Shown in pieces: positions 1 through 63,409 of a DNA stretch of 64,000 bases. Within the stretch, counting starts at the first letter, position 1, and the number at the start of each line of letters is the position of its first letter. Made by a program: the position numbers and the translations under genes. Below the pieces are notes generated by a model. The model did not search any database. It was not told where the DNA came from and saw only the letters and a list, made by a program, of their open reading frames with translations. Source of the DNA: Salpingoeca rosetta (Eukaryota > Protista > Choanoflagellata); contig JAWQFM010000015.1 in NCBI GenBank assembly GCA_033442325.1, positions 252,891 through 316,890 of the forward strand, in the 5' to 3' direction.

Positions 1-87
1 GTGTGTGTGTATGTGTGTGTGCGTGTGTGTATGTGTGTGTGCGTGTGTGTGTGTGCGCACGCATCGTCTGTGCGTGTGTGTGCTAAC

Positions 88-968
88 CGGGCCAATGGCG
101 AGCGAAACAAATTCGCGGGGAATGTCGAATGTGTGTGTCAGCATGTTCAGCGACTCCTGCAATCGAAAGTGACACGCAAGCAACACAACAATGTCAGCGC
201 TGCTTGTGTGTGTGTGCTTGTGTGTGTGTGTGTGCTTGTGTGCTTGTGTGTGTGTGTGTGCTTATGTGTGTGTGCTTATGTGTGTGTGTGTGTGTGCAGA
301 CCTGCTGGCGCTGGGCGATGGACTCGAGGAACCGCTGCTTGTCGGCGTGGATTTGAAGCTGTCAATGAACACAGAAGGTAGATACAAACACACCCCCCCC
401 CCACACACACACGACAAGCAAGGGGCAGTCAACGAAGCGTGAGGCAACAAAATTAACTGGCAAGGCGCAAGAGGTTCAAATAGGGATGCCGTGCACATGC
501 GTGTCACGTACGCGGCGAAGGAAGTCGTTCATGACCAGCTGTGATTTGTTGATCGCCTCCCGGTTGCCCTAAGGAAACACACACGCGCATACAGGAAACA
601 CATGCACGTGCACGGTTATGCTGTGAGCAAACCCGCAACGCAAGTCGGGATGAAGTCGGGATGAAAACGACAAAGCCCTGTCTTTCTCTTGACGATGCAT
701 GTATGCACACGCGAAGAGGCAGTGCGCAATGTGAAAGAAGCGAGTGAGCGCGGAACTTACGACGAGGACCCAGATTGGCTGGGCGCCGGGCGGGGTTTCG
801 ACCTGCACCGCCACCAGGCCGCACAGTGCCCGCAGATCCTCCTTGATCGCCTCGTCGCTCCTGTCGAAGCACAACACACACGCACGAAGAGCACAGCATT
901 GTGAGCCTAACAAACACTCGACATTGAGTGAATACGTGGGTATGTGTGTGTGTGTGTGTGCGCGTGCA

Positions 969-1000
<32 letters not shown>

Positions 1001-2262
1001 ATTGACGTACGCGGCCTGTACGAGCGTTGGCGCAAGGGCGACGTCGTGGCGGGCGAGCGTCTCCGGGTTGAACGCCGTGCTGCAATCATGCACGAAACAC
1101 AACATGAAAAGACACACACACACACACATACACACGCGATACTTTGGTGAGTGGATGCGACAACAACTGCTCAGCAGCGCGTAGTCAAAGCGCGATACAC
1201 TCTTGTGTTGTCGACAGCATGCGTGCAGGAGCACGCAATGCGCGTGCTTGCGGCGGCGGCTTACTTGTCGTTTGCCATGCGAACACGGCCGGGCTCCACC
1301 CACTCGTTGAAGCTCTCATCAAAGCCAGCGTACGTCACCAGCAGCAGCTGCAAGAGTGACACGGCAGCACGAGACAGTGGCACACATGCAAAACGCACGC
1401 TTGCGTGAGTAAAGAACGTGAGAGCGAAGCAAGCACAGGCAGGATGGCAGGCTGCACATTCATTCAACCACGGGTGTGAGGTGAGCAGTTGCAGCGTGTT
1501 GCACCACGTGACTGACCATGCTGGGGCCGTCGCCACGGACTTCAACGATGCTGGCACGCGCCCAGCACGGCGGGATGTTGGCGTCGACATAGTACAGCAC
1601 CTGGTGATTCGAGAAATGCTCAAGCATAAGCAGAATGCGCGTCGACACAAAGGGCACGTTGACACAAAGATATGCACACACACGTACTCGGCTTATAGGC
1701 AAGTACCTACGAACAAACGCACAAGCGAACAAAGGTACAAACAACAACCACGCCAGGACACACACACACACACACATGTGCACGTACGTCGACTTTCTGG
1801 CCTGGGACAGCCTTGAGGTCCTCATGGGGCGGCGTTGTGCGGACATGTGCCAGGGGCACTGACTGGGGCTGGCGCCAGCTACAGGAGCCACAACAACAAC
1901 AAACAACCACAAGTAGCCACAGCCCACAAAGCAACAGGACACGCAACGGAGTGAGCAAAAGCACGCGCGCGGGGCATCGACGCTCTTGCAACGCTAAACA
2001 ACAGGCGCAACCAGACGCTTGCACACCACGCCACAACGCACTTGTTGTCGAAGACGATGGTGGCATCGTCCTTGCTCCACTTTGTGATGGTTGCCTGTCG
2101 TTCACAACGGAGAGTTGTCGCGGGTTCAGTCAATAGCGCGGGAAATGAGTCAACGCGATCGGTTCATGCAGACCATGGCAGAACACAAACAAATTCGCTG
2201 CAACCACCACCTACCGGGAAATAGCCCCCAATCTCGGGGTCGAACACCTCGACGCGAAGCAT
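88..2262 (-). CDS. FMR1: Fragile X protein family (FMR1/FXR-like) RNA-binding protein, 5' part; gene continues beyond the left edge
   Basis: Ten GT-AG exons with consistent phases: 2262-2215, 2094-2042, 1878-1788, 1600-1517, 1347-1265, 1079-1011, 860-761, 568-512, 358-302, 156-88. Spliced protein: MLRVEVFDPEIGGYFPATITKWSKDDATIVFDNNWRQPQSVPLAHVRTTPP...VLYYVDANIPPCWARASIVEVRG...LVTYAGFDESFNEWVEPGRVRMAN...THTFDIPREFVSLAIGP. This is collinear with FMRP Agenet1 (VEV..F.NNW..VR.PP), Agenet2 (PCCWW..Y...YNE.V...RLR), KH0 and the start of KH1 (F...D..GLAIG). Confidence 0.85.
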
Positions 2263-2755
2263 GTCGTCGTCTCAAGTCTGTTTGCCTCTGCTAGTCTTGC
2301 TATGCGTTGTTGTTGTTGTTTCACTTTCACAACAAAGAAACACAGTGCACAGGCCAAAGTTGCAGACAAATTGAAGCGATCCACAGTCAGCACAACAAAA
2401 CGAACGTCAGTGAGATGGAACGGTGACAGAACGTATGTGTGTGGGTGTGTGTTGTGTGTTTGTGTGTGTCTTCCCCTCTTTCCCTCCCTCCCACTCTCGC
2501 CCTCGCCCTCGCCCTCGCACTCGCACTAACACTCACGCAAGCAAGCGAATAATGTGGGGTGTCAGGGCTGGCGTGGTTGCGAGCGAGCGAGTGGACAGCG
2601 GCAAACAAACAACACAAAGCAAGCAAGAAGCAAGCAAGCAAGAAGCAGACACAAACCTTTTCCACTGCCACGACGCACCAATGGAATTCTGTTGGAAAAT
2701 ATTCGCCAATTTTCCGGAGATCACAGGTTTGTGACAACGACGACGACGAAGAACA

Positions 2756-3401
2756 ATGACTGGTGGCGGTGGCAGCAACAAGGTGACGGCCAGCCTGGCA
2801 GCGGCGAGGCGGAGGTTTCGACGGCTCCCAGAGCACCTGGCACAGTGCAAGCAAGAGGTGCGTGTGGGTGTTTGATAGGTAGAGGGGAGAGGGGAGTTTA
2901 GTCGTGGGTGCGTGTGATGTGTGCGACGTGTGGTGTGGTGTGTGGTGTGATGTGTGCGACGTGTGATGTGATATGCGATGCGCAACGTCATCATCACAGA
3001 TATGCAAGTGTTTGTGGGTGTTCGTGGGTGCTGACCACGGCTTCCCACACGGTGCAGGCGTCAACGTATGCCAAGTGCATTGAAGGGAACGTTTCTGGTG
3101 TGCAGAAGGACATGTGTGCGCAAGAGTTTTCTCGCTTGCTGGCCTGCGTCAAAGCAGCTGCGGTACGTGTGCCATGAACATGGGCGTGTGTGCGAGCGTG
3201 TGTTGTTGTGCGTGTGCGAGCGTGTGCATTTTTGTGAGTGTGAGTGCATTGTGTATGCGTGTATGCGTGTGTGTACGTGTGTGTATGTGTGTCTGTGTAC
3301 AAACGAGTGAAACTGTGCTTCCCCAACCAGCCATTTTCTCACATGGCAGCGCGCCATGCTTCACGACACTTAACACGCTCGTTTTGCAGGCCAAGAAGTG
3401 A
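2756..3401 (+). CDS. NDUFAF8: NDUFAF8-like twin CX9C mitochondrial complex I assembly factor
   Basis: Exons 2756-2857, 3058-3162, 3390-3401 give MTGGGGSNKVTASLAAARRRFRRLPEHLAQCKQEASTYAKCIEGNVSGVQKDMCAQEFSRLLACVKAAAAKK*. Two CX9C motifs; pattern R..P..LA.C..EA..Y..C...KD.CA.EF..L..C is typical of NDUFAF8. Confidence 0.85.
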
Positions 3402-11227: not shown

Positions 11228-12757
11228 ATGACGACGACGATGACGACGCCGCCGCCGCGAGAGGCGCCTGCACAGGCACGAGCGCTGTTTGATCGCTTCA
11301 CAATGGGCATGGTGCAAACGTTGGAAGAGTGCGAGCATGTCGTGGACATTCGGAGCAAGCCCGCAGTGCCGTGCACCAGCTCGCAAATCGCCACTTGGGA
11401 AAGCACGCACACCCACCGGCTCCCCACAGATGTCAAGGACTTCTACCTCAGCTCCAACGGCCTGCAAATTGCGTGGACCGTGCTCTTCGGCCAGCAGATC
11501 CTGCCCCTCGGGTGGCTGCACATCAACGCCCTCGGCGATCTCAAGCCCGTGTCCGCCACATCCTCGTCTGCGACTTCCATGGCTGGCACCAGCAAGGCCA
11601 GGGCCTCCAAGCTGCCAGAGGGCGTTGAGGAGTTTCTCAAGTCCACCAGCGTCGCAGATGATACCCTCACCATCAAGCGGAGGAGACACATGCCGTTCCG
11701 AGCGTTTGCCCTTTCGCCTTGCGGCACGCACGCCACCGTGTGCCTCACCTTCACACATCCATCGCCGTCCATCTGGCTCCTGGACCGCAGCAAGACGTGG
11801 CACATGATCGCACGCACGTTCACCGAGTACTACCGCCTGATGACCCTGTACCTTGGCCTGCCGGAGTGGCAGTATGCGCTCACGACACTTGGGCCTTTGC
11901 CCGACACCCGCCGCTGGCTGCACGCCTTTGTACCCCCGCACGTCCTGCGCGACAACGCCCACGAAAGTGGTGGCGGCAGTGGTGGCGGTGGTGGTAATCA
12001 GCACGGCAGCACTCGAGATGGTGCTTCCAATGGCAGTGCGTGGACTGTTGCGGGCAGCACGGATCGCAGCGTCAGCCCACAGGGCACAGGCACCGACCAC
12101 CATCATCAACATCATCAACATCATCAACAACACCACCAACGACAACAAAACGTGGTGGGCAGCAGCACGTGGCCCAACAGGCATGGTAGCGATGGTGATG
12201 GCGATGGTGGCACCACTGTCGCTGATGGCACGGTCGGTGCACGCTCCCGGCGCACGAGGGCTCAGTCTGCACTGCCAACATCCGCGCGATCGCAGCTGCG
12301 TGGCGAAAGCAGCGGCCGATACGACGCTGCCGGCAATGGGGCGGTGGCATCAAGGCATCGCCTAAAGAGCGCTGCACCTGGGCGCTCCCGGCGAGCGTCA
12401 CGTGATCACCGCGACGCAGGCGCTGTCTCCACCACCACACACGCAACCAAGTTCACCAGCGGCGGCAGCAGCGGCGGCGGTGCGAATATGGGGGCGACCG
12501 CAGCAGCGGCAGCACACACGCGACGGGCCATGTCCAAGCTGGACCTGGAGACGGTGATGCGCCGCGTGCGCAACACCGTGGTGAGCCCATCCAAAGGTGA
12601 TGGTGGTGGTGGTGGTGAGCAGCAGCACCAGCACCAGCAGCAGCAGCAGCAGCAGGTGCGGTCGAGTCAAGCACGACCGCCTCGGCCATTGAGCGGCGCG
12701 ACGACACCCGGCACCACACGCACGACGTCACGCACCAGCGCCACTTCCAAGCAATAG
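11228..12757 (+). CDS. TPGS2: Tubulin polyglutamylase complex subunit 2 (SMI1/KNR4-like domain), single exon with low-complexity tail
   Basis: 509-aa ORF: FDRFTMGMVQTLE...IATWE...LPTDVKDFYLSSNGLQIAW...LPLGWLHIN...IWLLDRSKTWHMIARTFTEYYRLMTLYLGLPEWQYALT, the TPGS2 signature. Confidence 0.85.
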   Translation: MTTTMTTPPPREAPAQARALFDRFTMGMVQTLEECEHVVDIRSKPAVPCTSSQIATWESTHTHRLPTDVKDFYLSSNGLQIAWTVLFGQQILPLGWLHINALGDLKPVSATSSSATSMAGTSKARASKLPEGVEEFLKSTSVADDTLTIKRRRHMPFRAFALSPCGTHATVCLTFTHPSPSIWLLDRSKTWHMIARTFTEYYRLMTLYLGLPEWQYALTTLGPLPDTRRWLHAFVPPHVLRDNAHESGGGSGGGGGNQHGSTRDGASNGSAWTVAGSTDRSVSPQGTGTDHHHQHHQHHQQHHQRQQNVVGSSTWPNRHGSDGDGDGGTTVADGTVGARSRRTRAQSALPTSARSQLRGESSGRYDAAGNGAVASRHRLKSAAPGRSRRASRDHRDAGAVSTTTHATKFTSGGSSGGGANMGATAAAAAHTRRAMSKLDLETVMRRVRNTVVSPSKGDGGGGGEQQHQHQQQQQQQVRSSQARPPRPLSGATTPGTTRTTSRTSATSKQ

Positions 12758-32619: not shown

Positions 32620-39392
<6,773 letters not shown>

Positions 39393-44322: not shown

Positions 44323-44552
44323 TTAAGCCTCCTCTTGGAGTTCCAGGAGGGTTTCCAGCTCCTCCACCAGCGTCTCAAAGCGATAGGCGCAGCGCGTATC
44401 AGGCACGTTGGATTGCCTATGTTTGGGTGTGTGTGGGAGGGGGGAGATGTGTGTGATGTGTGTGTGTGTGAGGGATGCAAGGATGGCAAACGTGCACACA
44501 CATACTCGCGCGCGCACACACCTCACGTATGCACACATCCCCCCCCCGACGC

Positions 44553-44594
<42 letters not shown>

Positions 44595-46325
44595 CACCAC
44601 CACCACCAACGTACGCAATGTTGTTGCCTGAAGGGCCGGCGCTGTCAAAGTGGTCGCCGAGCCAGTGGCGCTTAAACTCTGCAGGGAAGCCGCTGATGCG
44701 AACAGAGTTGGCGCAAATCTCGCACACATCCACGCGGGACAGGCGCCACACCTGCGACGCAATGCTGTACTCCTCAATCAGGGGCTCGCGTGACAGATGG
44801 AACAACAGCGGGTCGTCTGTTTGTGTGTGTGTGTGTGCACTGTGGTGTGTGTGTGATGTGTGGTGTGTCTGTGTGGGGAATGTGAGAAGCGGGGTGGAGG
44901 GTGAACGACGACTGCTCAACGCACGCCTTCCAAACACGCACGCAGAGTCACGCGAGAGCAAACAAACAAAACACCAAACCAAACCAAGCAAACTAACAAC
45001 CTCAACAAACAAAGAAACCAAGCAAAGGTCAGAACACACACACGTACACAACACACACACAAAATACGGACCGGTGGAGAGGGTGACGTTCATGCCCATG
45101 GCATGGAAGTTGGGGAAGGGGTTCTTGTGATAGTCGAGGAAGAGGTGGTTGTTGCTGAGCGGCGACACAGAGAGGCCCACCTGGCACAGGTAGTACAGGT
45201 ACTGCAGCACGGGCGCCTGTGGCAAGTTACACCGCAACATTGGGAATGGGAAACAGAGGTCAAAGTGAGATGGGGTATACACACACATGTGCAAGCAAGA
45301 GCAGGCACACGCGCACACCCATACCCACACCCCCACCCCACACACACACGCACACACACACACACACACACACTTACTTTGCGGAGACGAATGCCGTGGG
45401 AAATGTTCTCGCTGAGAAGGTAGGTGGTGACCAGGTGCTCGATGGAGCCCGCCTCGCCAGAGTGGGGGCGGAACGCAAACGTGTTCAGGCCCTTGGCCTT
45501 GCGCAACTTGTTCAGCACGCTCAGGTTGGCATACGTGTAGTACGCATAGTACGAGTACGACGGGTTGTCGGGCTTGTCCCACATCTCTGGTTGCTCGCAG
45601 CTGCGTATATGCGTGTGCATATGCGTGTGTGTGTGCATGTGTGTGGGTGAGGACATAAATCACGCAGCAACACAGGCCATGTGCACTCGTTCCCAAGCCC
45701 TTCTTCACAACCCCCCCCCCCCTTCCGGGCTCCTCCATGATCATGAAAACACTCTTCCAATCACCCGTCCCACCCCTTCCTCGCATCAACACGACACGCC
45801 CGCCAGCAAAGAGAGAAGGCGGCACCTTGGGGTGTGTGGGAAGCGCTCTGGCTTGCTCTCGTCGTCCACGCTGTCAAAGCCAACCACGTGCGCCAGGAAC
45901 TCCGCCAGCTTGGGGTCCTTCTCGGGGTTGAGCGTGTTCTGCGCAGCAGGCAAAGGGGTGTGGAGGAGGGGGGAAAAAGTGGGTTGGTGAGTGTGGTGCA
46001 GATGTGATGCAACTGTGCGTGTGTGTGTGTGTGTTGTGTGCACGTACTTGTAGCAAGCAGACGCAGTGGCAAAGACATTTGAAGAGGAACAAGAGGAGGA
46101 AAAGGCAAAGCACGCATGCACAGACACATGTGCAGACACAGACACACGTACACAGACACATGAGCCAACTGACCTCGAAGAGAGGGCGGAAGAGGTTGTC
46201 GAGAACTTGTGCAAAGTTGTCGAGGAGGCCCGTCTTCTTGTACACATAACTGCACACACACAAAGCGGTACAAAAAAAAAAAGCAGTGAGCAAAGGGTAC
46301 AGCGAAAGAGTGTCCAAACAGCACG

Positions 46326-51328: not shown

Positions 51329-53509
51329 ATGCAAGAAGGAAACAACGTCTTCTTCGAAAACGCACACAACGCGCACACGAAGAAGAGAAGAAATTGCGCG
51401 ATTGCGAAATCGGGAAACGACAGCATGAACAGTAGTCGGATATGGCGGAGCGGCTCAACAAGCCCAGCAAGCACAACAAGCGCAGCAAGTACAACAAGCG
51501 CAGGAGCGTTGGGTTTGGTAGCTGTGCTGCCGTGTTGTGGCAGCGATTGCAAGCAGCACGCGCGCTGCGTCAGCGTGGACTTTGGCGTCACCACGCCACA
51601 CATCCAAGGCAAGAAGCACAAGAAGCAGCACCAGCAGCACGACCACAGGCCAACACAGCATGAGCAACGACAGCAAGCAACGTCGTCTGTCACCGAAGAG
51701 GTGGATGGTGCCGCGCTGCCCCGGAAGCGTGCAAAAGGCGCGCTGACAGGAACACCAGCCAAACCAGCAGCTGTGCCAGCATCGGTACCAGCCGCAGGCA
51801 CGCAGCGTGACAGGCTGTCTGCCTGTTTCAGTGCTTGTGAGACCTTCTATTCAACGCTGCCTCGTGAGCGCAGATGTGTCCACGACTCGCACACGTGCTT
51901 GACGCGAGAGCAGATCAAGACGCTCTCCAAGGACCCTTGGCCCGCAGCAACAGATCCAGGCACAACACAACAACTGCCGCCACTGAGGTTGCCAGACGCG
52001 AGCAGCGACAGGATGCCCATGCGCCTCACGACCACCGACCTCGCCAACCGCATCGTCTGCGTAATGTCACCGGAAAGGGTGGCCCACGATGAAAAGCAGC
52101 CTGCTGACGGCCAGGCAGAGGCGACCAACACCAAGCTCGATACGAACTGCGGTGCGTGCTGCTACCGAGCGCAGATTGACGACAAGGAGATACTGGTGCC
52201 ATCGCCCTGCAGGTTCCTGCTGGCAAACATCCAACACCTGCGCCCGCACATGCAGGACCTTGGCGTCTTTGATCTCATTGTGATGGATCCGCCGTGGCAC
52301 AACGGCTCTGTTCGCCGCGGGTCCCGATATGGTACCATGGATTACGACGCCATCATGGACATTCCCATCCCGTTTCTCATGTCGCCGCGCTGCCTCCTCG
52401 CCCTCTGGATCACCAACAACGACCGCTGCGCCACATTCGTCCACGTGAGTTGCAAGGAATGTGTGTGTGCGTGCTTTTGTCTGTGTGTGTGTGCGTGTGT
52501 GTGTGTATGCGTGTGTGTGTGTGTGTGTGTGTGTGCGTGCTTTTGTCTGTGTGTGTGTGTATGTGTATGTGTTTGTGCTTTTGTGTGTATGTGTGTGTGT
52601 ATGTGTGTGTGTGCTTTTTTGTGTGTATGTGTGTGTGTGTGCTTTTTTGTGTGTGTGTGTGGTGGTGGTCACTAATGTGATGAATTCAATGCGGTCGTGC
52701 CGCAGTTCGCACCCGTGCGCACAAGCACACCATCACATACATAGACACAGACGCGCAGCCACACCACATTTGTGCATGCATGAGCTGATGCTGTTCCCTT
52801 GCGTGCTGTGCAGGAGAGGTTGCTGCCTCACTGGGGCTTGAAGAAGGTGACGGAGTGGAAATGGTTAAAGGTGACGACGCAAGGGGAGCCCGTGTTCCCG
52901 CTCTCAAGCCGCCACAAGCGCCCATATGAGGTGCTCATCCTCGCCACGAATGCCCCGGGCGCCTTTGAAACCGCACCAGCATACGGCATCGTCCACCAAT
53001 GGCAGGCAGCGATGCGCCAGCAGCAGGACGAGGACAGGAGGGAGCAGCAGCAGGACGAGGAGAAACAGCAGAAATTGGAGACGAAGGAGAACGAGGGTGA
53101 GAAGCAGGAAGGTGAACAGCACCAGCAAGTTGCGAAATGCTCAAACCACACTGAACACTCACAGCAGGTCAAACATGCACCACCAGCTGTTGTGCAGCAT
53201 GGAGCTGATGCCCCAATAGCGCTGCCTGCGGACCTGCGCATTGCCGGCGTGCCCTCGCTCGTGCACAGCGAAAAGCCGCCCGCAATTCACCGCTTGCTCG
53301 TGTCGTTGCTGACACGCGGCTCGAACACATCTCCTTTGCGACAGCAGCAGCAGCAGCAGCAGCGGCAGGAGGAGGATGGTGTGCTTGCAAGCACACCACG
53401 ACAACGCCCGCGGTGTCTGGAAGTGTTTGCGCGGCGGTTGCACCGGCATTGGACGAGTGTTGGCAACCAGGTCTTCAAGCTGCAGGACGTGCGCCTGTAT
53501 GACGCTTGA
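51329..53509 (+). CDS. METTL4: MT-A70 family N6-adenine methyltransferase, METTL4-like (2 exons; start may be the ATG at 51425)
   Basis: FDLIVMDPPWHNGSVRR (DPPW), LALWITN, WKWLKVTTQGEPVFPL...HKRPYE, VPSLVHSEKPP, LEVFARRL...WTSVGNQV. NxSVxR and KxPYE are METTL4-clade features. Confidence 0.9.
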
Positions 53510-61170: not shown

Positions 61171-62512
61171 TCAGTGCCTCGTGCGGCGCCTGTGTGGCGG
61201 CACGTAGACCTCCGTTTGCCTTTGCTCCTCCTGGTCCTGGGTACCTTCAGTGCTACGTGTGGTTGTGAGCCCATCCAGGCCGGGCGGGGTAGAGACGCTG
61301 CGCGTGTGGCGGCGGCGGCGGCGATGCAGATGTTTCTGATCGCCACCGTGGCCCCAGCGAGCATTGGGATGAGGATGATGTGGCTGCCTCCCGTTTGGCC
61401 TGCTCACTCCGCTGTTGCGGCGGCGTGTCTCCGGTGAGGCCGGAGCAGAGGTTGTCACGGGAGTGTTTGCGTAAGCACGCGTATTGCCACAGTTGGCATC
61501 ATAGCCGTATCCATAGCCGTCGCCCAGCATGTGCAATGATGAAGCACTGCTGTCAACAGAGGAGTCACGGGTGTTGCTGCCACTGCTGCTGACGCTGTGG
61601 TCGTCTTGGTAATCCTGGTAGTTGGAGTTCATGAACGACGAGAGTTCGCGCTCACCGTGGCGCTGCAGCAACCTGCCCATGTTCGTGGCTGTCTCACCAT
61701 CCTGCTCACATGTTCGTTGCTGACGTTGCTGACGTTGCTGGCGGTGGTGATGATGGCGGTGTTCGTCGCTTCTGCTGCCTCCGCTTCCTTTGCTGTCTCC
61801 GCTTCCTCTGCTGCCCCCACTTCCTCGTTTGTGCCTACCAACACCACTACTTCTCCTGCTGCTGACGGTGGTGGTGGTGTGCTGTCGGATGCGCGTCCAG
61901 AAGGTGACTTTGGCGGCGCGCTCCTCGCCGAGCACGCGAAGCGCCCACTGCTCCAGCTGTGCGCTGAGCGGCACCTGGTGCATGAGCACGAGCCCAGGGC
62001 CGTGCATGTCCACGTACTTTCGCAGCTTGCGCCCAAAGTCGTGCAGCAGCCGCGGGCAGGATGTCCTCGGGAAGGTGAGCCCGGACTTTACGTCAATCCA
62101 CTGCACGCATGCACCGTTGATGGTCGTGGGCGAGTGGAACTTGATGTCTGGGGTGGCCACGTTTGTCTCGTGCGTCTTCTTCATCTCGGCCTCCACCAGA
62201 TACGCGCTGCGCGGCACGCCCATGGCCGCCAAGTCCGCCGTGAGCTGCACCTCCGCGTGCGTGGCCTGGCGCGGCTTCGTCTGCGCGTCCCTGTACGTGT
62301 ATGCGGAGATTTTGTCTGTCTTGCTGCGGTGCGTGACCTGCTCGAACCAGAACCTGCGGTTTGCCTCGTCCGTCTTGGAGTAGTAGCGTTTCCCCTTGAC
62401 GCACAGGGCGCCCTCCAGCGCAATCTGTTCCAGCTCCTTGTCGGCAGCCACCATCGCCAGCCATTCTTCCTCTGTAAACTCGGGTAGCGCAGCGGTGCGA
62501 TCAGTGTCCGTG

Positions 62513-62549
<37 letters not shown>

Positions 62550-63409
62550 CCATCATCATCGTCGTCGTCGTCGTTGAATGTGGAGTCAGCATCGTCGTTG
62601 CCGTCATCAGCATCGTCGTCATCATTCCTGTTCTGCTCAAGACCATCCTCATCATTCTCGTCGTCGTCGCTGTCAACGGCGGCGTTGCGGAGGCATTCGC
62701 GCGCCTGGAGGACGAGGGCAATGCGCTTGCGGTTGTGGACCATGAGGCGAAGAAACGCCTCGTCCTCCACAATGTGGAAGAGCTCCGTCTTGGCGGTGGG
62801 GTCGAGGTGGTGCGGCGTGAGGCAGAAGTACTTGCTGAAGAGGCCGCCAACCAGCGCCATGCCCAGCGCAGTGACGCCAATGTTGTGCCTGCGGGCAAGC
62901 GTTTGCAGGTTCAGTTCGCGGCGGCGCCCGCGCGTCTCCCGAAACTCGTGCTGCCTGCGGTAGAGCGCCTGCATGTTGAGGTTCGACATGCGCTTCTGCC
63001 AGTCCATGAACAGCGTGACAACGAGCGCCTGCCTGCTGTGGGCAAAGGCGGGGCGGAGCTGGCGATTCAACGCAGAGAACGCGCGCTCCCCAACAGCAGC
63101 GCGCACGTCCTTGTGGCTGTGGCACGGCTGATGCACGTCCACAGGGGTTGGCAGCGACTGGAAGATGCGCTCGATGACTTGGTCGTCCACGCGGACATCC
63201 TGCCGCCAATTCGGGTTGACGTAGCTGGTGCTGGTGCTGGCTGTGGGGGTGATTGCCGGCTTGATGGTGGAAGTGGAACTCAGGGAACTGGAGGGCATGT
63301 CGAGGCAAGGGGTTGGATCAGGTGTGGGAAGAAGCCCTTCTGGCTTGTATGCGTAGGTCTGCTGCTCTTGGCGAGGAGGGTAATGGGACCGAGAACGGTT
63401 GTCGTTCAT
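61171..63409 (-). CDS. CDIN1/C15orf41-like TPD-domain PD-(D/E)XK nuclease; frame break at ~62510 (79-nt intron or 1-nt indel)
   Basis: C-terminal part YLVEAEMK...ATPDIKFHSPTTINGACVQWIDVKS...KYVDMHGPGLVL fits the TPD family (TPD...WIESK...Y..RFGPGLVI). The upstream ORF (ATG 63409) has an HTH-like LARRHNIGVTALG segment and ends in poly-Asp. Confidence 0.72.

What the first reader, a model, noticed from the sequence alone, without database searches (positions are those of the whole stretch)
88..2262. Fragile X protein (FMR1/FXR) homolog hidden in ten micro-exons of a probable unicellular holozoan
Seen: ten exons of 48-100 nt splice with consistent phases into one protein; no single ORF in the track shows it. 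Known: FMRP/FXR1/FXR2 have Agenet1-Agenet2-KH0-KH1-KH2-RGG and are mostly discussed as animal, neuron-associated translation repressors. The reconstructed protein follows that order motif by motif (VEV, FDNNW, VR..PP, PCW, Y...FNE.V...R.R, LAIG). Inference: if the host is a choanoflagellate, the FMRP translational-control module predates animals and neurons, and the exon fragmentation would make it easy to mis-annotate.
Basis: partly seen in the sequence, partly recalled or inferred. Interest (0 to 1): 0.85.

Follow-up and report, generated by a model that had tools for sequence, protein, structure and literature searches.

The report
Choanoflagellate fragile-X-family RNA-binding protein gene
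This is a real, expressed 14-exon gene of the choanoflagellate Salpingoeca rosetta encoding a 756-residue protein built like the animal fragile-X proteins, but the public genome annotation already carries a model with the same start codon and length, so it is a solid though modest finding.

Summary
On the minus strand, ten exons of 48-100 nt (window 2262 down to 88) have GT..AG borders and compatible phases. Four more exons lie left of the window, giving a 756-aa protein. Stranded RNA reads and transcript contigs support all 13 junctions.

- a KH1 loop, G-P-K-G
- a KH2 loop, G-K-N-G
- an RG-rich box of 12 RG dipeptides in 47 residues
- Q-rich and K-rich tails

The KH2 exon's best solved relative is human FMR1 KH2 (E 1.3e-6), about 10 bits above any other KH domain.

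The window is 100% identical over 21.5 kb to NCBI GCA_000188695.1, scaffold GL832969.1, which is Salpingoeca rosetta. The host is therefore a choanoflagellate, not an animal.

Two limits apply:
Exon-by-exon tests of the Agenet/Tudor, KH0 and KH1 parts were blank. The animal C-terminal core model (PF12235) did not match the single-exon C-terminal part.
- The gene is not hidden. GenBank has a gene with the same start codon and a 756-aa product.

No paper in the held library links FMR1 or FMRP to choanoflagellates. Verdict: a divergent pre-animal FXR-family homologue of modest interest.

The parts
2263..2323 (-). 5' untranslated region, minimum extent. RNA depth continues to about window 2430 and is zero beyond.
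   Evidence: A transcript contig reaches L005 5314, which is window 2323. An in-frame stop lies 4 codons upstream of the ATG.
2215..2262 (-). Exon 1 (48 nt), ATG at 2262, residues 1-16 (MLRVEVF...), start of the first Tudor/Agenet-like domain.
   Evidence: Junction to exon 2 seen in RNA (L005 5084->5205). The GenBank gene ends at this same base.
2042..2094 (-). Exon 2 (53 nt), residues 17-34, ending inside the second N codon of F-D-N-N-W.
   Evidence: RNA joints L005 5084->5205 and 4869->5033.
1788..1878 (-). Exon 3 (91 nt), residues 34-64 (W...VR..PP...).
   Evidence: Upstream joint.
1517..1600 (-). Exon 4 (84 nt), residues 65-92 (..PPCW..), second Tudor/Agenet-like domain.
   Evidence: RNA joint L005 4338->4508.
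1265..1347 (-). Exon 5 (83 nt), residues 93-120 (..YAGFDESFNEWV..), last strands of the second Royal-family domain.
   Evidence: RNA joints. All six weak PDB matches are chromo-barrel domains of EAF3 or MOF, E 0.5-2.
1011..1079 (-). Exon 6 (69 nt), residues 120-143, start of the KH0-like region.
   Evidence: RNA joint L005 4070->4256.
761..860 (-). Exon 7 (100 nt), residues 143-176, KH0-like region.
   Evidence: RNA joint L005 3558->3751 and contig piece 3751-3851.
512..568 (-). Exon 8 (57 nt), residues 177-195.
   Evidence: RNA joints.
302..358 (-). Exon 9 (57 nt), residues 196-214.
   Evidence: The loose-end consensus after L005 3151 reads this exon (44 reads). The bin itself was masked as repeat-flanked.
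88..156 (-). Exon 10 (69 nt), residues 215-237, ending ..SLAIGP. This is the first strand of KH1 and the first half of its GxxG loop.
   Evidence: RNA joint L005 2900->3079.
1..87 (-). Start of intron 10 (178 nt, GT-microsatellite rich). The gene continues left of the window in G000:C15. Exon 11 is L005 2728-2900 (KH1). Exon 12 is L005 2345-2465 (KH2, GKNG). Exon 13 is L005 1238-2143 (helix, RG box, poly-Q, K-rich). Exon 14 is L005 591-950 (stop at 591-593), followed by the 3'UTR.
   Evidence: RNA joints 2464->2727, 2142->2344 and 949->1237. L005 is G000:C15:249900-255500, and window coordinate = L005 coordinate - 2991.

Best explanation
This is the single-copy FXR-family (FMR1/FXR1/FXR2-like) gene of the choanoflagellate Salpingoeca rosetta. 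It has 14 exons on the minus strand, at complement 250490..255152 of scaffold GL832969.1, and it is transcribed and spliced into a 756-aa protein. Shown here: the exon structure, its expression, the host, two KH loops (GPKG at 236-239, GKNG at 303-306), specific similarity of KH2 to human FMR1 KH2, and an RG-rich box at 385-432 followed by Q-, K- and A/T/P-rich low-complexity tails. Inferred: residues 1-118 form two Tudor/Agenet-type barrels and residues 120-214 form a KH0-like module. Inferred mechanism: the protein acts as a cytoplasmic mRNA-binding regulator. The KH1 and KH2 GxxG clefts would hold single-stranded RNA or contact the ribosome. The RG box would bind structured, G-rich RNA. The N-terminal barrels would dock methylated or other protein partners. 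The disordered tail would drive granule assembly. The net effect would be control of translation or storage of bound mRNAs, as described for animal FMRP.
For: Gene model: GT..AG at all 13 introns, one open frame of 756 codons, and an in-frame stop 4 codons upstream of the ATG. Expression: stranded reads are almost all in one orientation, 9 junctions appear as direct joints in 4 runs, and the other 4 are supported by a loose-end consensus and by contig arithmetic. Host: 21,530 of 21,530 bases are identical to GCA_000188695.1 GL832969.1, which a paper names as S. rosetta. Family: Pfam KH_1 matches exon 12 at E 2.4e-4. The best PDB hit of exon 12 is FMR1 2qnd at E 1.3e-6. Its KH2 stretch scores 24.8 bits with 17 of 27 residues identical, against 14.8 bits for the next KH domain. 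There are 12 RG dipeptides in residues 386-431 and GxxG loops at 236 and 303. Exon 5 matches only Royal-family chromo-barrels. The gene is single copy. From memory, not tested here: residues 1-118 align co-linearly with the human FMRP N-terminus at roughly 35-40% identity. Also from memory, the first four introns fall at the same alignment positions and phases as in human FMR1, whose exon 2 is also 53 nt.
Against: FXR-specific Pfam models did not detect this gene exon by exon: Agenet, Tudor_FRX1 and KH_9 in six-frame searches and exon peptides against Pfam. PF12235 (FXMRP1_C_core) did not match exon 13, which is one uninterrupted 302-aa exon, so that test was fair. The same exon-wise method did detect CYFIP strongly. 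The N-terminal similarity to the Pfam models is therefore weak, or the models are too short for split exons. PDB searches of exons 3, 4, 7, 10 and 11 found no FMRP chain. The GenBank product has no Pfam hit on record. No function has been tested.
Confidence: 0.85

Rival explanations
1. It is a generic two-KH plus RG-box RNA-binding protein of S. rosetta. It would share KH and RGG modules with FMRP by common domain ancestry only, and would have an unrelated N-terminal region. It would not be an orthologue of the animal FXR family.
For: Only the general KH_1 model hit, at 21.3 bits, just under its 21.5 cut-off. All FXR-specific Pfam models were blank on this gene. N-terminal exons found no FMRP chain in the PDB. 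No Pfam hit is on record for the GenBank product.
Against: KH2 is about 10 bits closer to FMR1 KH2 than to any other solved KH domain. There are exactly two canonical KH domains, followed by a helix and an RG box, and preceded by about 210 residues whose exon 5 carries a Royal-family signature. No other known family combines tandem Royal-family domains, two KH domains and an RGG box (established knowledge). The recalled co-linear N-terminal similarity and shared intron positions also argue against it.
Confidence: 0.1
2. The locus is animal DNA or an assembly artefact, through contamination or recent horizontal transfer from an animal, and not a native choanoflagellate gene.
For: None found.
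Against: The gene lies 250 kb inside a 1.5-Mb scaffold of the S. rosetta assembly. Runs from 6 studies, all labelled with one organism, hold it. It is spliced and expressed in S. rosetta RNA runs. Its intron sizes (120-287 nt) and GT/CA microsatellites match the rest of the window. It is far too divergent from animal FXR proteins for a recent transfer.
Confidence: 0.01
3. It is a transcribed but non-functional or decaying gene.
For: Long low-complexity tails are present. No functional data exist.
Against: The 756-codon frame is intact across 14 exons. All splice sites are canonical. Depth is steady in every RNA run laid, and both GxxG loops are intact.
Confidence: 0.04

Closest known systems
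Animal FXR family: human FMRP (FMR1), FXR1, FXR2 and Drosophila dFMR1
   Same: The order of parts is the same: an N-terminal region with Tudor/Agenet-like motifs, a KH0-like linker, KH1 (GxxG), KH2 (GxxG), a helix, then an RG/RGG box and a disordered tail. The KH2 core is 17/27 identical to human FMR1 KH2. The isoleucine after the KH2 GxxG loop, equivalent to human I304 by my recollection of the numbering, is kept. The gene is single copy, as in invertebrates.
   Different: The variable loop in KH2 is short and lacks the long vertebrate insert. The C-terminal core is not recognised by Pfam PF12235. The RG box is a long GRG repeat, followed by poly-Q, K-rich and A/T/P-rich tails without counterpart in my recollection of animal proteins. 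The N-terminal part is too divergent for exon-wise detection. The organism has no neurons.
Other multi-KH RNA-binding proteins (FUBP/KHSRP, PCBP/hnRNP K, Nova, IGF2BP)
   Same: They share the type I KH fold with a GxxG loop, and they are the next-best PDB matches of exon 12 (E 3.6e-5 to 0.3).
   Different: They have three or four KH domains, or RRMs, and lack the Royal-family N-terminus. Their KH domains score about 10 bits lower than FMR1 KH2.
Chromo-barrel and Tudor-knot Royal-family domains (EAF3/MRG15, MOF)
   Same: Exon 5 shares the Y-x-G...(D/E)EWV...R signature of the last strands of the barrel.
   Different: The matches are weak (E 0.5-2) and cover one exon only. Those proteins are chromatin factors without KH domains.

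Membership tests
FXR family (FMR1/FXR1/FXR2) | Two N-terminal Tudor/Agenet (Royal-family) domains | tested here: inconclusive
   The domains are split over exons 1-5 (16-30 aa each). Exon peptides gave no Pfam hit. Six-frame searches with PF05641 and PF18336 gave no hit on this gene. Exon 5 weakly matches chromo-barrels only. Full-length search was not possible because the spliced protein has no reference. The by-eye motif order agrees with FMRP, but that rests on recollection.
FXR family (FMR1/FXR1/FXR2) | KH0 module between the Agenet domains and KH1 | tested here: inconclusive
   PF17904 gave no hit in six frames. Exons 6 and 7 gave no Pfam hit and no FMRP chain in the PDB. The region is split over exons 6-9.
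FXR family (FMR1/FXR1/FXR2) | KH1 domain with GxxG loop | tested here: inconclusive
   The sequence shows ..SLAIG-P-K-G.. at residues 233-239, spanning exons 10 and 11. Exon 11 alone gave no Pfam hit and no PDB hit. Its single-sequence AlphaFold model (pLDDT 77) gave no meaningful Foldseek match.
FXR family (FMR1/FXR1/FXR2) | KH2 domain with GxxG loop, closest to FXR KH2 | tested here: met
   Pfam KH_1 E 2.4e-4. The best PDB hit is FMR1 2qnd at E 1.3e-6, with the KH2 stretch at 24.8 bits against 14.8 for the next family. GKNG lies at 303-306.
FXR family (FMR1/FXR1/FXR2) | RGG/RG box C-terminal to KH2 | tested here: met
   There are 12 RG dipeptides in residues 386-431. Composition of residues 376-435 is G 42%, R 20%, P 15%.
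FXR family (FMR1/FXR1/FXR2) | Animal-type C-terminal core (Pfam PF12235 FXMRP1_C_core). This is typical of animal members, and I do not treat it as defining for a pre-animal homologue. | tested here: not met
   Exon 13 is one 302-aa exon, so the test is fair. PF12235 gave no hit at E <= 10. The genome-wide six-frame search hit only an unrelated place at E 1.2.
FXR family (FMR1/FXR1/FXR2) | Reciprocal best hit and phylogenetic placement with FXR proteins | not testable with these tools
   No FXR sequence could be obtained by reference. Searches with exon 13 returned only low-complexity matches.

The most novel reading that the evidence does not exclude
The choanoflagellate protein is a functional orthologue of FMRP. 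The fragile-X translational-control module (Royal-family barrels + KH0-KH1-KH2 + RG box, with CYFIP also present in the genome) would then have existed in the last common ancestor of choanoflagellates and animals. It has not been pointed out in the literature. S. rosetta is genetically tractable, so it would allow the ancestral, non-neuronal role of FMRP to be tested directly.
Probability: 0.4. Interest if true: 0.5.

Novelty: new member of a known kind. Interest (0 to 1): 0.3.

Why it matters
FMRP is mostly studied as a neuronal translation regulator. A bona fide homologue in the closest unicellular relatives of animals would date the module before animals and neurons, as has been shown for many synaptic scaffold proteins. 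It would also offer a simple, CRISPR-tractable cell in which to ask what the protein does without synapses. The value is tempered in three ways. The gene model is already public. Pre-animal origins of 'neuronal' proteins are no longer surprising. The N-terminal domain assignment still needs a full-length test.

Tried and rejected
The spliced 756-aa protein exists only in my script folder and has no reference, and I did not type it, split it or read it through stops.

(2) I tried to recover the organism's own annotated protein, or relatives, with exon 13. The search of protein representatives gave only two low-complexity bacterial hits. The search for homologous proteins gave one spurious hit. 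The longest stop-free frame around exon 13 is 427 aa, too short to reach a 756-aa target under the 1.75x length rule, so I did not repeat the search.

(3) Exon-wise Pfam gave only KH_1 on exon 12. A CCDC53 hit at E 0.0036 on the Q/K-rich part of exon 13 is compositional.

(4) Exon-wise PDB searches of exons 3, 4, 7, 10, 11 and the first 50 aa of exon 13 gave nothing, or chance helical or designed proteins.

(5) Six-frame searches of the genome with Agenet, KH_9, Tudor_FRX1 and FXMRP1_C_core gave no hit on this gene.

(6) The ESM Atlas look-alike search for exon 11 gave no usable hit.

(7) AlphaFold of exon 11 alone followed by Foldseek against the PDB gave only retroviral-integrase fragments at E > 0.3, which are meaningless for a domain fragment.

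(8) Partner searches for Caprin-1_dimer and NUFIP1 were blank, which is not evidence of absence.

Nine looked for FMR1, FMRP or fragile X together with choanoflagellate, Salpingoeca, Monosiga, Capsaspora or early-animal names, or with Agenet and metazoa. None found a paper reporting this homologue. One paper id (PMC4697369) is not held. The tenth search identified the genome assembly.

(10) The bacterial promoter/terminator scan is irrelevant to a eukaryote.

Full report
WHAT IS THERE. They lie at 2215-2262, 2042-2094, 1788-1878, 1517-1600, 1265-1347, 1011-1079, 761-860, 512-568, 302-358 and 88-156. Their sizes are 48, 53, 91, 84, 83, 69, 100, 57, 57 and 69 nt. Every intron starts GT and ends AG, and the phases join into one frame. 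No mechanically listed ORF contains the protein. The ATG at 2262 is preceded by an in-frame stop four codons upstream.

EXTENSION. The window is G000:C15:252891-316890. I fetched the DNA to its left and found four more exons:
- Exon 11 (173 nt) completes KH1. The loop G-P-K-G at residues 236-239 spans the exon 10/11 junction.
- Exon 12 (121 nt) carries the KH2 core, with G-K-N-G at residues 303-306.
- Exon 13 (906 nt) carries a helix, an RG-rich box (12 RG dipeptides between residues 386 and 431; G 42%, R 20%), two poly-Q tracts and K-rich stretches.
- Exon 14 ends the 756-aa frame at L005 591-593.

The introns measure 120-287 nt, and many hold GT/CA microsatellites.

EXPRESSION AND SPLICING. 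I laid two raw stranded RNA runs and two contig runs on the 5.6-kb locus.
- Nine junctions appear directly as CT..AC joints on the plus strand, which are GT..AG on the minus strand. Each is backed by 10-128 reads per raw RNA run.
- The two junctions around exon 9 appear as a composite joint. A loose-end consensus of 44 reads reads exactly into exon 9. That bin was masked because microsatellites flank it.
- The exon 7/6 and exon 4/3 junctions were not among the rows shown. One 2219-nt contig runs from exon 14 to the 5'UTR, and the unshown stretches of its record coordinates equal the summed exon lengths to the base.
- First mates lie almost only on the plus strand, as expected for a minus-strand RNA in a standard stranded library.

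HOST AND EXISTING ANNOTATION. A single-exon 509-aa SMI1/KNR4 ORF lies 9 kb away. I used it for an exact look-up. It is carried by NCBI GCA_000188695.1, scaffold GL832969.1. The returned 21,530 bases are identical to window 1228-22757. A paper names that assembly as Salpingoeca rosetta. So the host is a choanoflagellate and not an animal.

The same look-up lists an annotated minus-strand gene that ends exactly at the ATG I found and has a 756-residue product. This is the same length as my RNA-supported model. No Pfam family is on record for it. The gene is therefore not hidden or mis-annotated in the public record.

FAMILY TESTS. Under the rules I neither typed it nor read it through stops, so the full-length Pfam, PDB and AlphaFold tests were left out and I worked exon by exon.

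Positive results:
- Exon 12 matches Pfam KH_1 at E 2.4e-4 (21.3 bits against a cut-off of 21.5).
- Its best match among all solved structures is human FMR1 KH1-KH2 (2qnd, E 1.3e-6). The KH2 stretch aligns at 17 of 27 identical residues and 24.8 bits, against 14.8 bits for the best KH domain of the runner-up FUBP2.
- Exon 5 finds only Royal-family chromo-barrels (EAF3, MOF), and only weakly, at E 0.5-2.

Negative or blank results:
- Exons 3, 4, 6, 7, 10 and 11 gave no Pfam hit. Exons 3, 4, 7, 10 and 11 found no FMRP chain in the PDB.
- Six-frame searches of the genome with Agenet, Tudor_FRX1 and KH_9 did not light up this gene.
- PF12235, the animal C-terminal core, did not match exon 13. That exon is uninterrupted, so the test is fair.
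- As a control on the exon-wise method, it did detect a CYFIP gene strongly. The blanks therefore mean real divergence, or models too short for split exons. They do not mean the method fails on this genome.

The gene is single copy.

WHAT I RECALL BUT DID NOT TEST. Residues 1-118 align co-linearly with my recollection of the human FMRP N-terminus at roughly 35-40% identity (VEV; F-E/D-N-N-W; VR.PP; P.CW; Y....Y/FNE.V). The first four introns fall at the same alignment positions and phases as in human FMR1, whose exon 2 I recall as also 53 nt. No other family I know combines tandem Royal-family domains, two KH domains and an RGG box. This recollection raises my confidence, but it is not a tool result.

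MECHANISM (INFERRED). By analogy with animal FXR proteins:
- The two KH GxxG clefts would bind single-stranded RNA or the ribosome.
- The RG box would bind structured, G-rich RNA.
- The N-terminal barrels would bind protein partners.
- The low-complexity tail would promote granule formation.

Together these would regulate translation or storage of target mRNAs. Shown: architecture, intact loops, expression. Not shown: any binding or function.

PARTNERS. A CYFIP homologue is present on C1, and a second, weaker set of matches lies on C12. CYFIP is also a WAVE-complex subunit, so its presence is not specific evidence. Caprin and NUFIP1 models were blank, which is uninformative.

NOVELTY. No paper in the held library connects FMR1 or FMRP with choanoflagellates. 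Other first-stage notes on this genome also guessed a choanoflagellate, which I have now confirmed. Three things keep the interest modest. The gene model is public. Pre-animal origins of 'neuronal' proteins are well established for other families. Orthology databases probably already group this protein, which I could not check. I rate it a new, divergent member of a known family, with interest 0.3.

Noticed in passing
L005:1684-1800 (exon 13, left of the window; G000:C15:251583-251699): In the CAG/CAA-coded poly-Q part, RNA reads show short-anchored joints between the two Q tracts (1705->1773, with 4 or 7 letters between them). They also show base differences at 1787 and 1791 and many loose ends. 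These are probably reads of other CAG-rich transcripts laid here. An in-frame length polymorphism of about 20 residues is not excluded.
   Followed up: no
window 1-60, 190-300, 940-1000, 1110-1135, 1760-1780: Most introns of the gene carry (GT)n/(CA)n microsatellites. The reads tool masked them as repeats, which hid exon 9 from the depth table.
   Followed up: partly
G000:C1:3421874-3428031 (+) and G000:C12:1319426-1322886 (-): There are two loci with CYFIP (Pfam FragX_IP) matches. The C1 gene matches across profile positions 62-803 in about 14 exons. The C12 locus is a weaker, possibly paralogous or partial copy.
   Followed up: no
window 2756-3401 (+): A small divergent gene starts about 500 bp upstream of the FXR start codon on the other strand. 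GenBank gives it a 72-aa product. The two genes may share a bidirectional promoter region.
   Followed up: no
window 11228-12757 (+): A rare single-exon gene in this intron-rich genome: a 509-aa SMI1/KNR4 (SUKH-1) protein, Pfam E 2.8e-8.
   Followed up: partly
window 35664-37460 (-), 44326-45825 (-), 51329-52672 (+), 61174-62898 (-): Long exons of other genes in the window match Lipin middle domain, AMP deaminase (E 2e-49), an MT-A70 methyltransferase and a TPD-motif protein.
   Followed up: no
G000:C7:987452-987529 (-): This is the only Agenet (PF05641) match in the genome by six-frame search, at E 0.03 and below the cut-off. It lies in a different gene.
   Followed up: no
L005:1123-1870: There is low antisense read depth (first mate on minus, 12-53x) over exon 13. 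It may be cross-laid repeat reads or a real antisense transcript.
   Followed up: no
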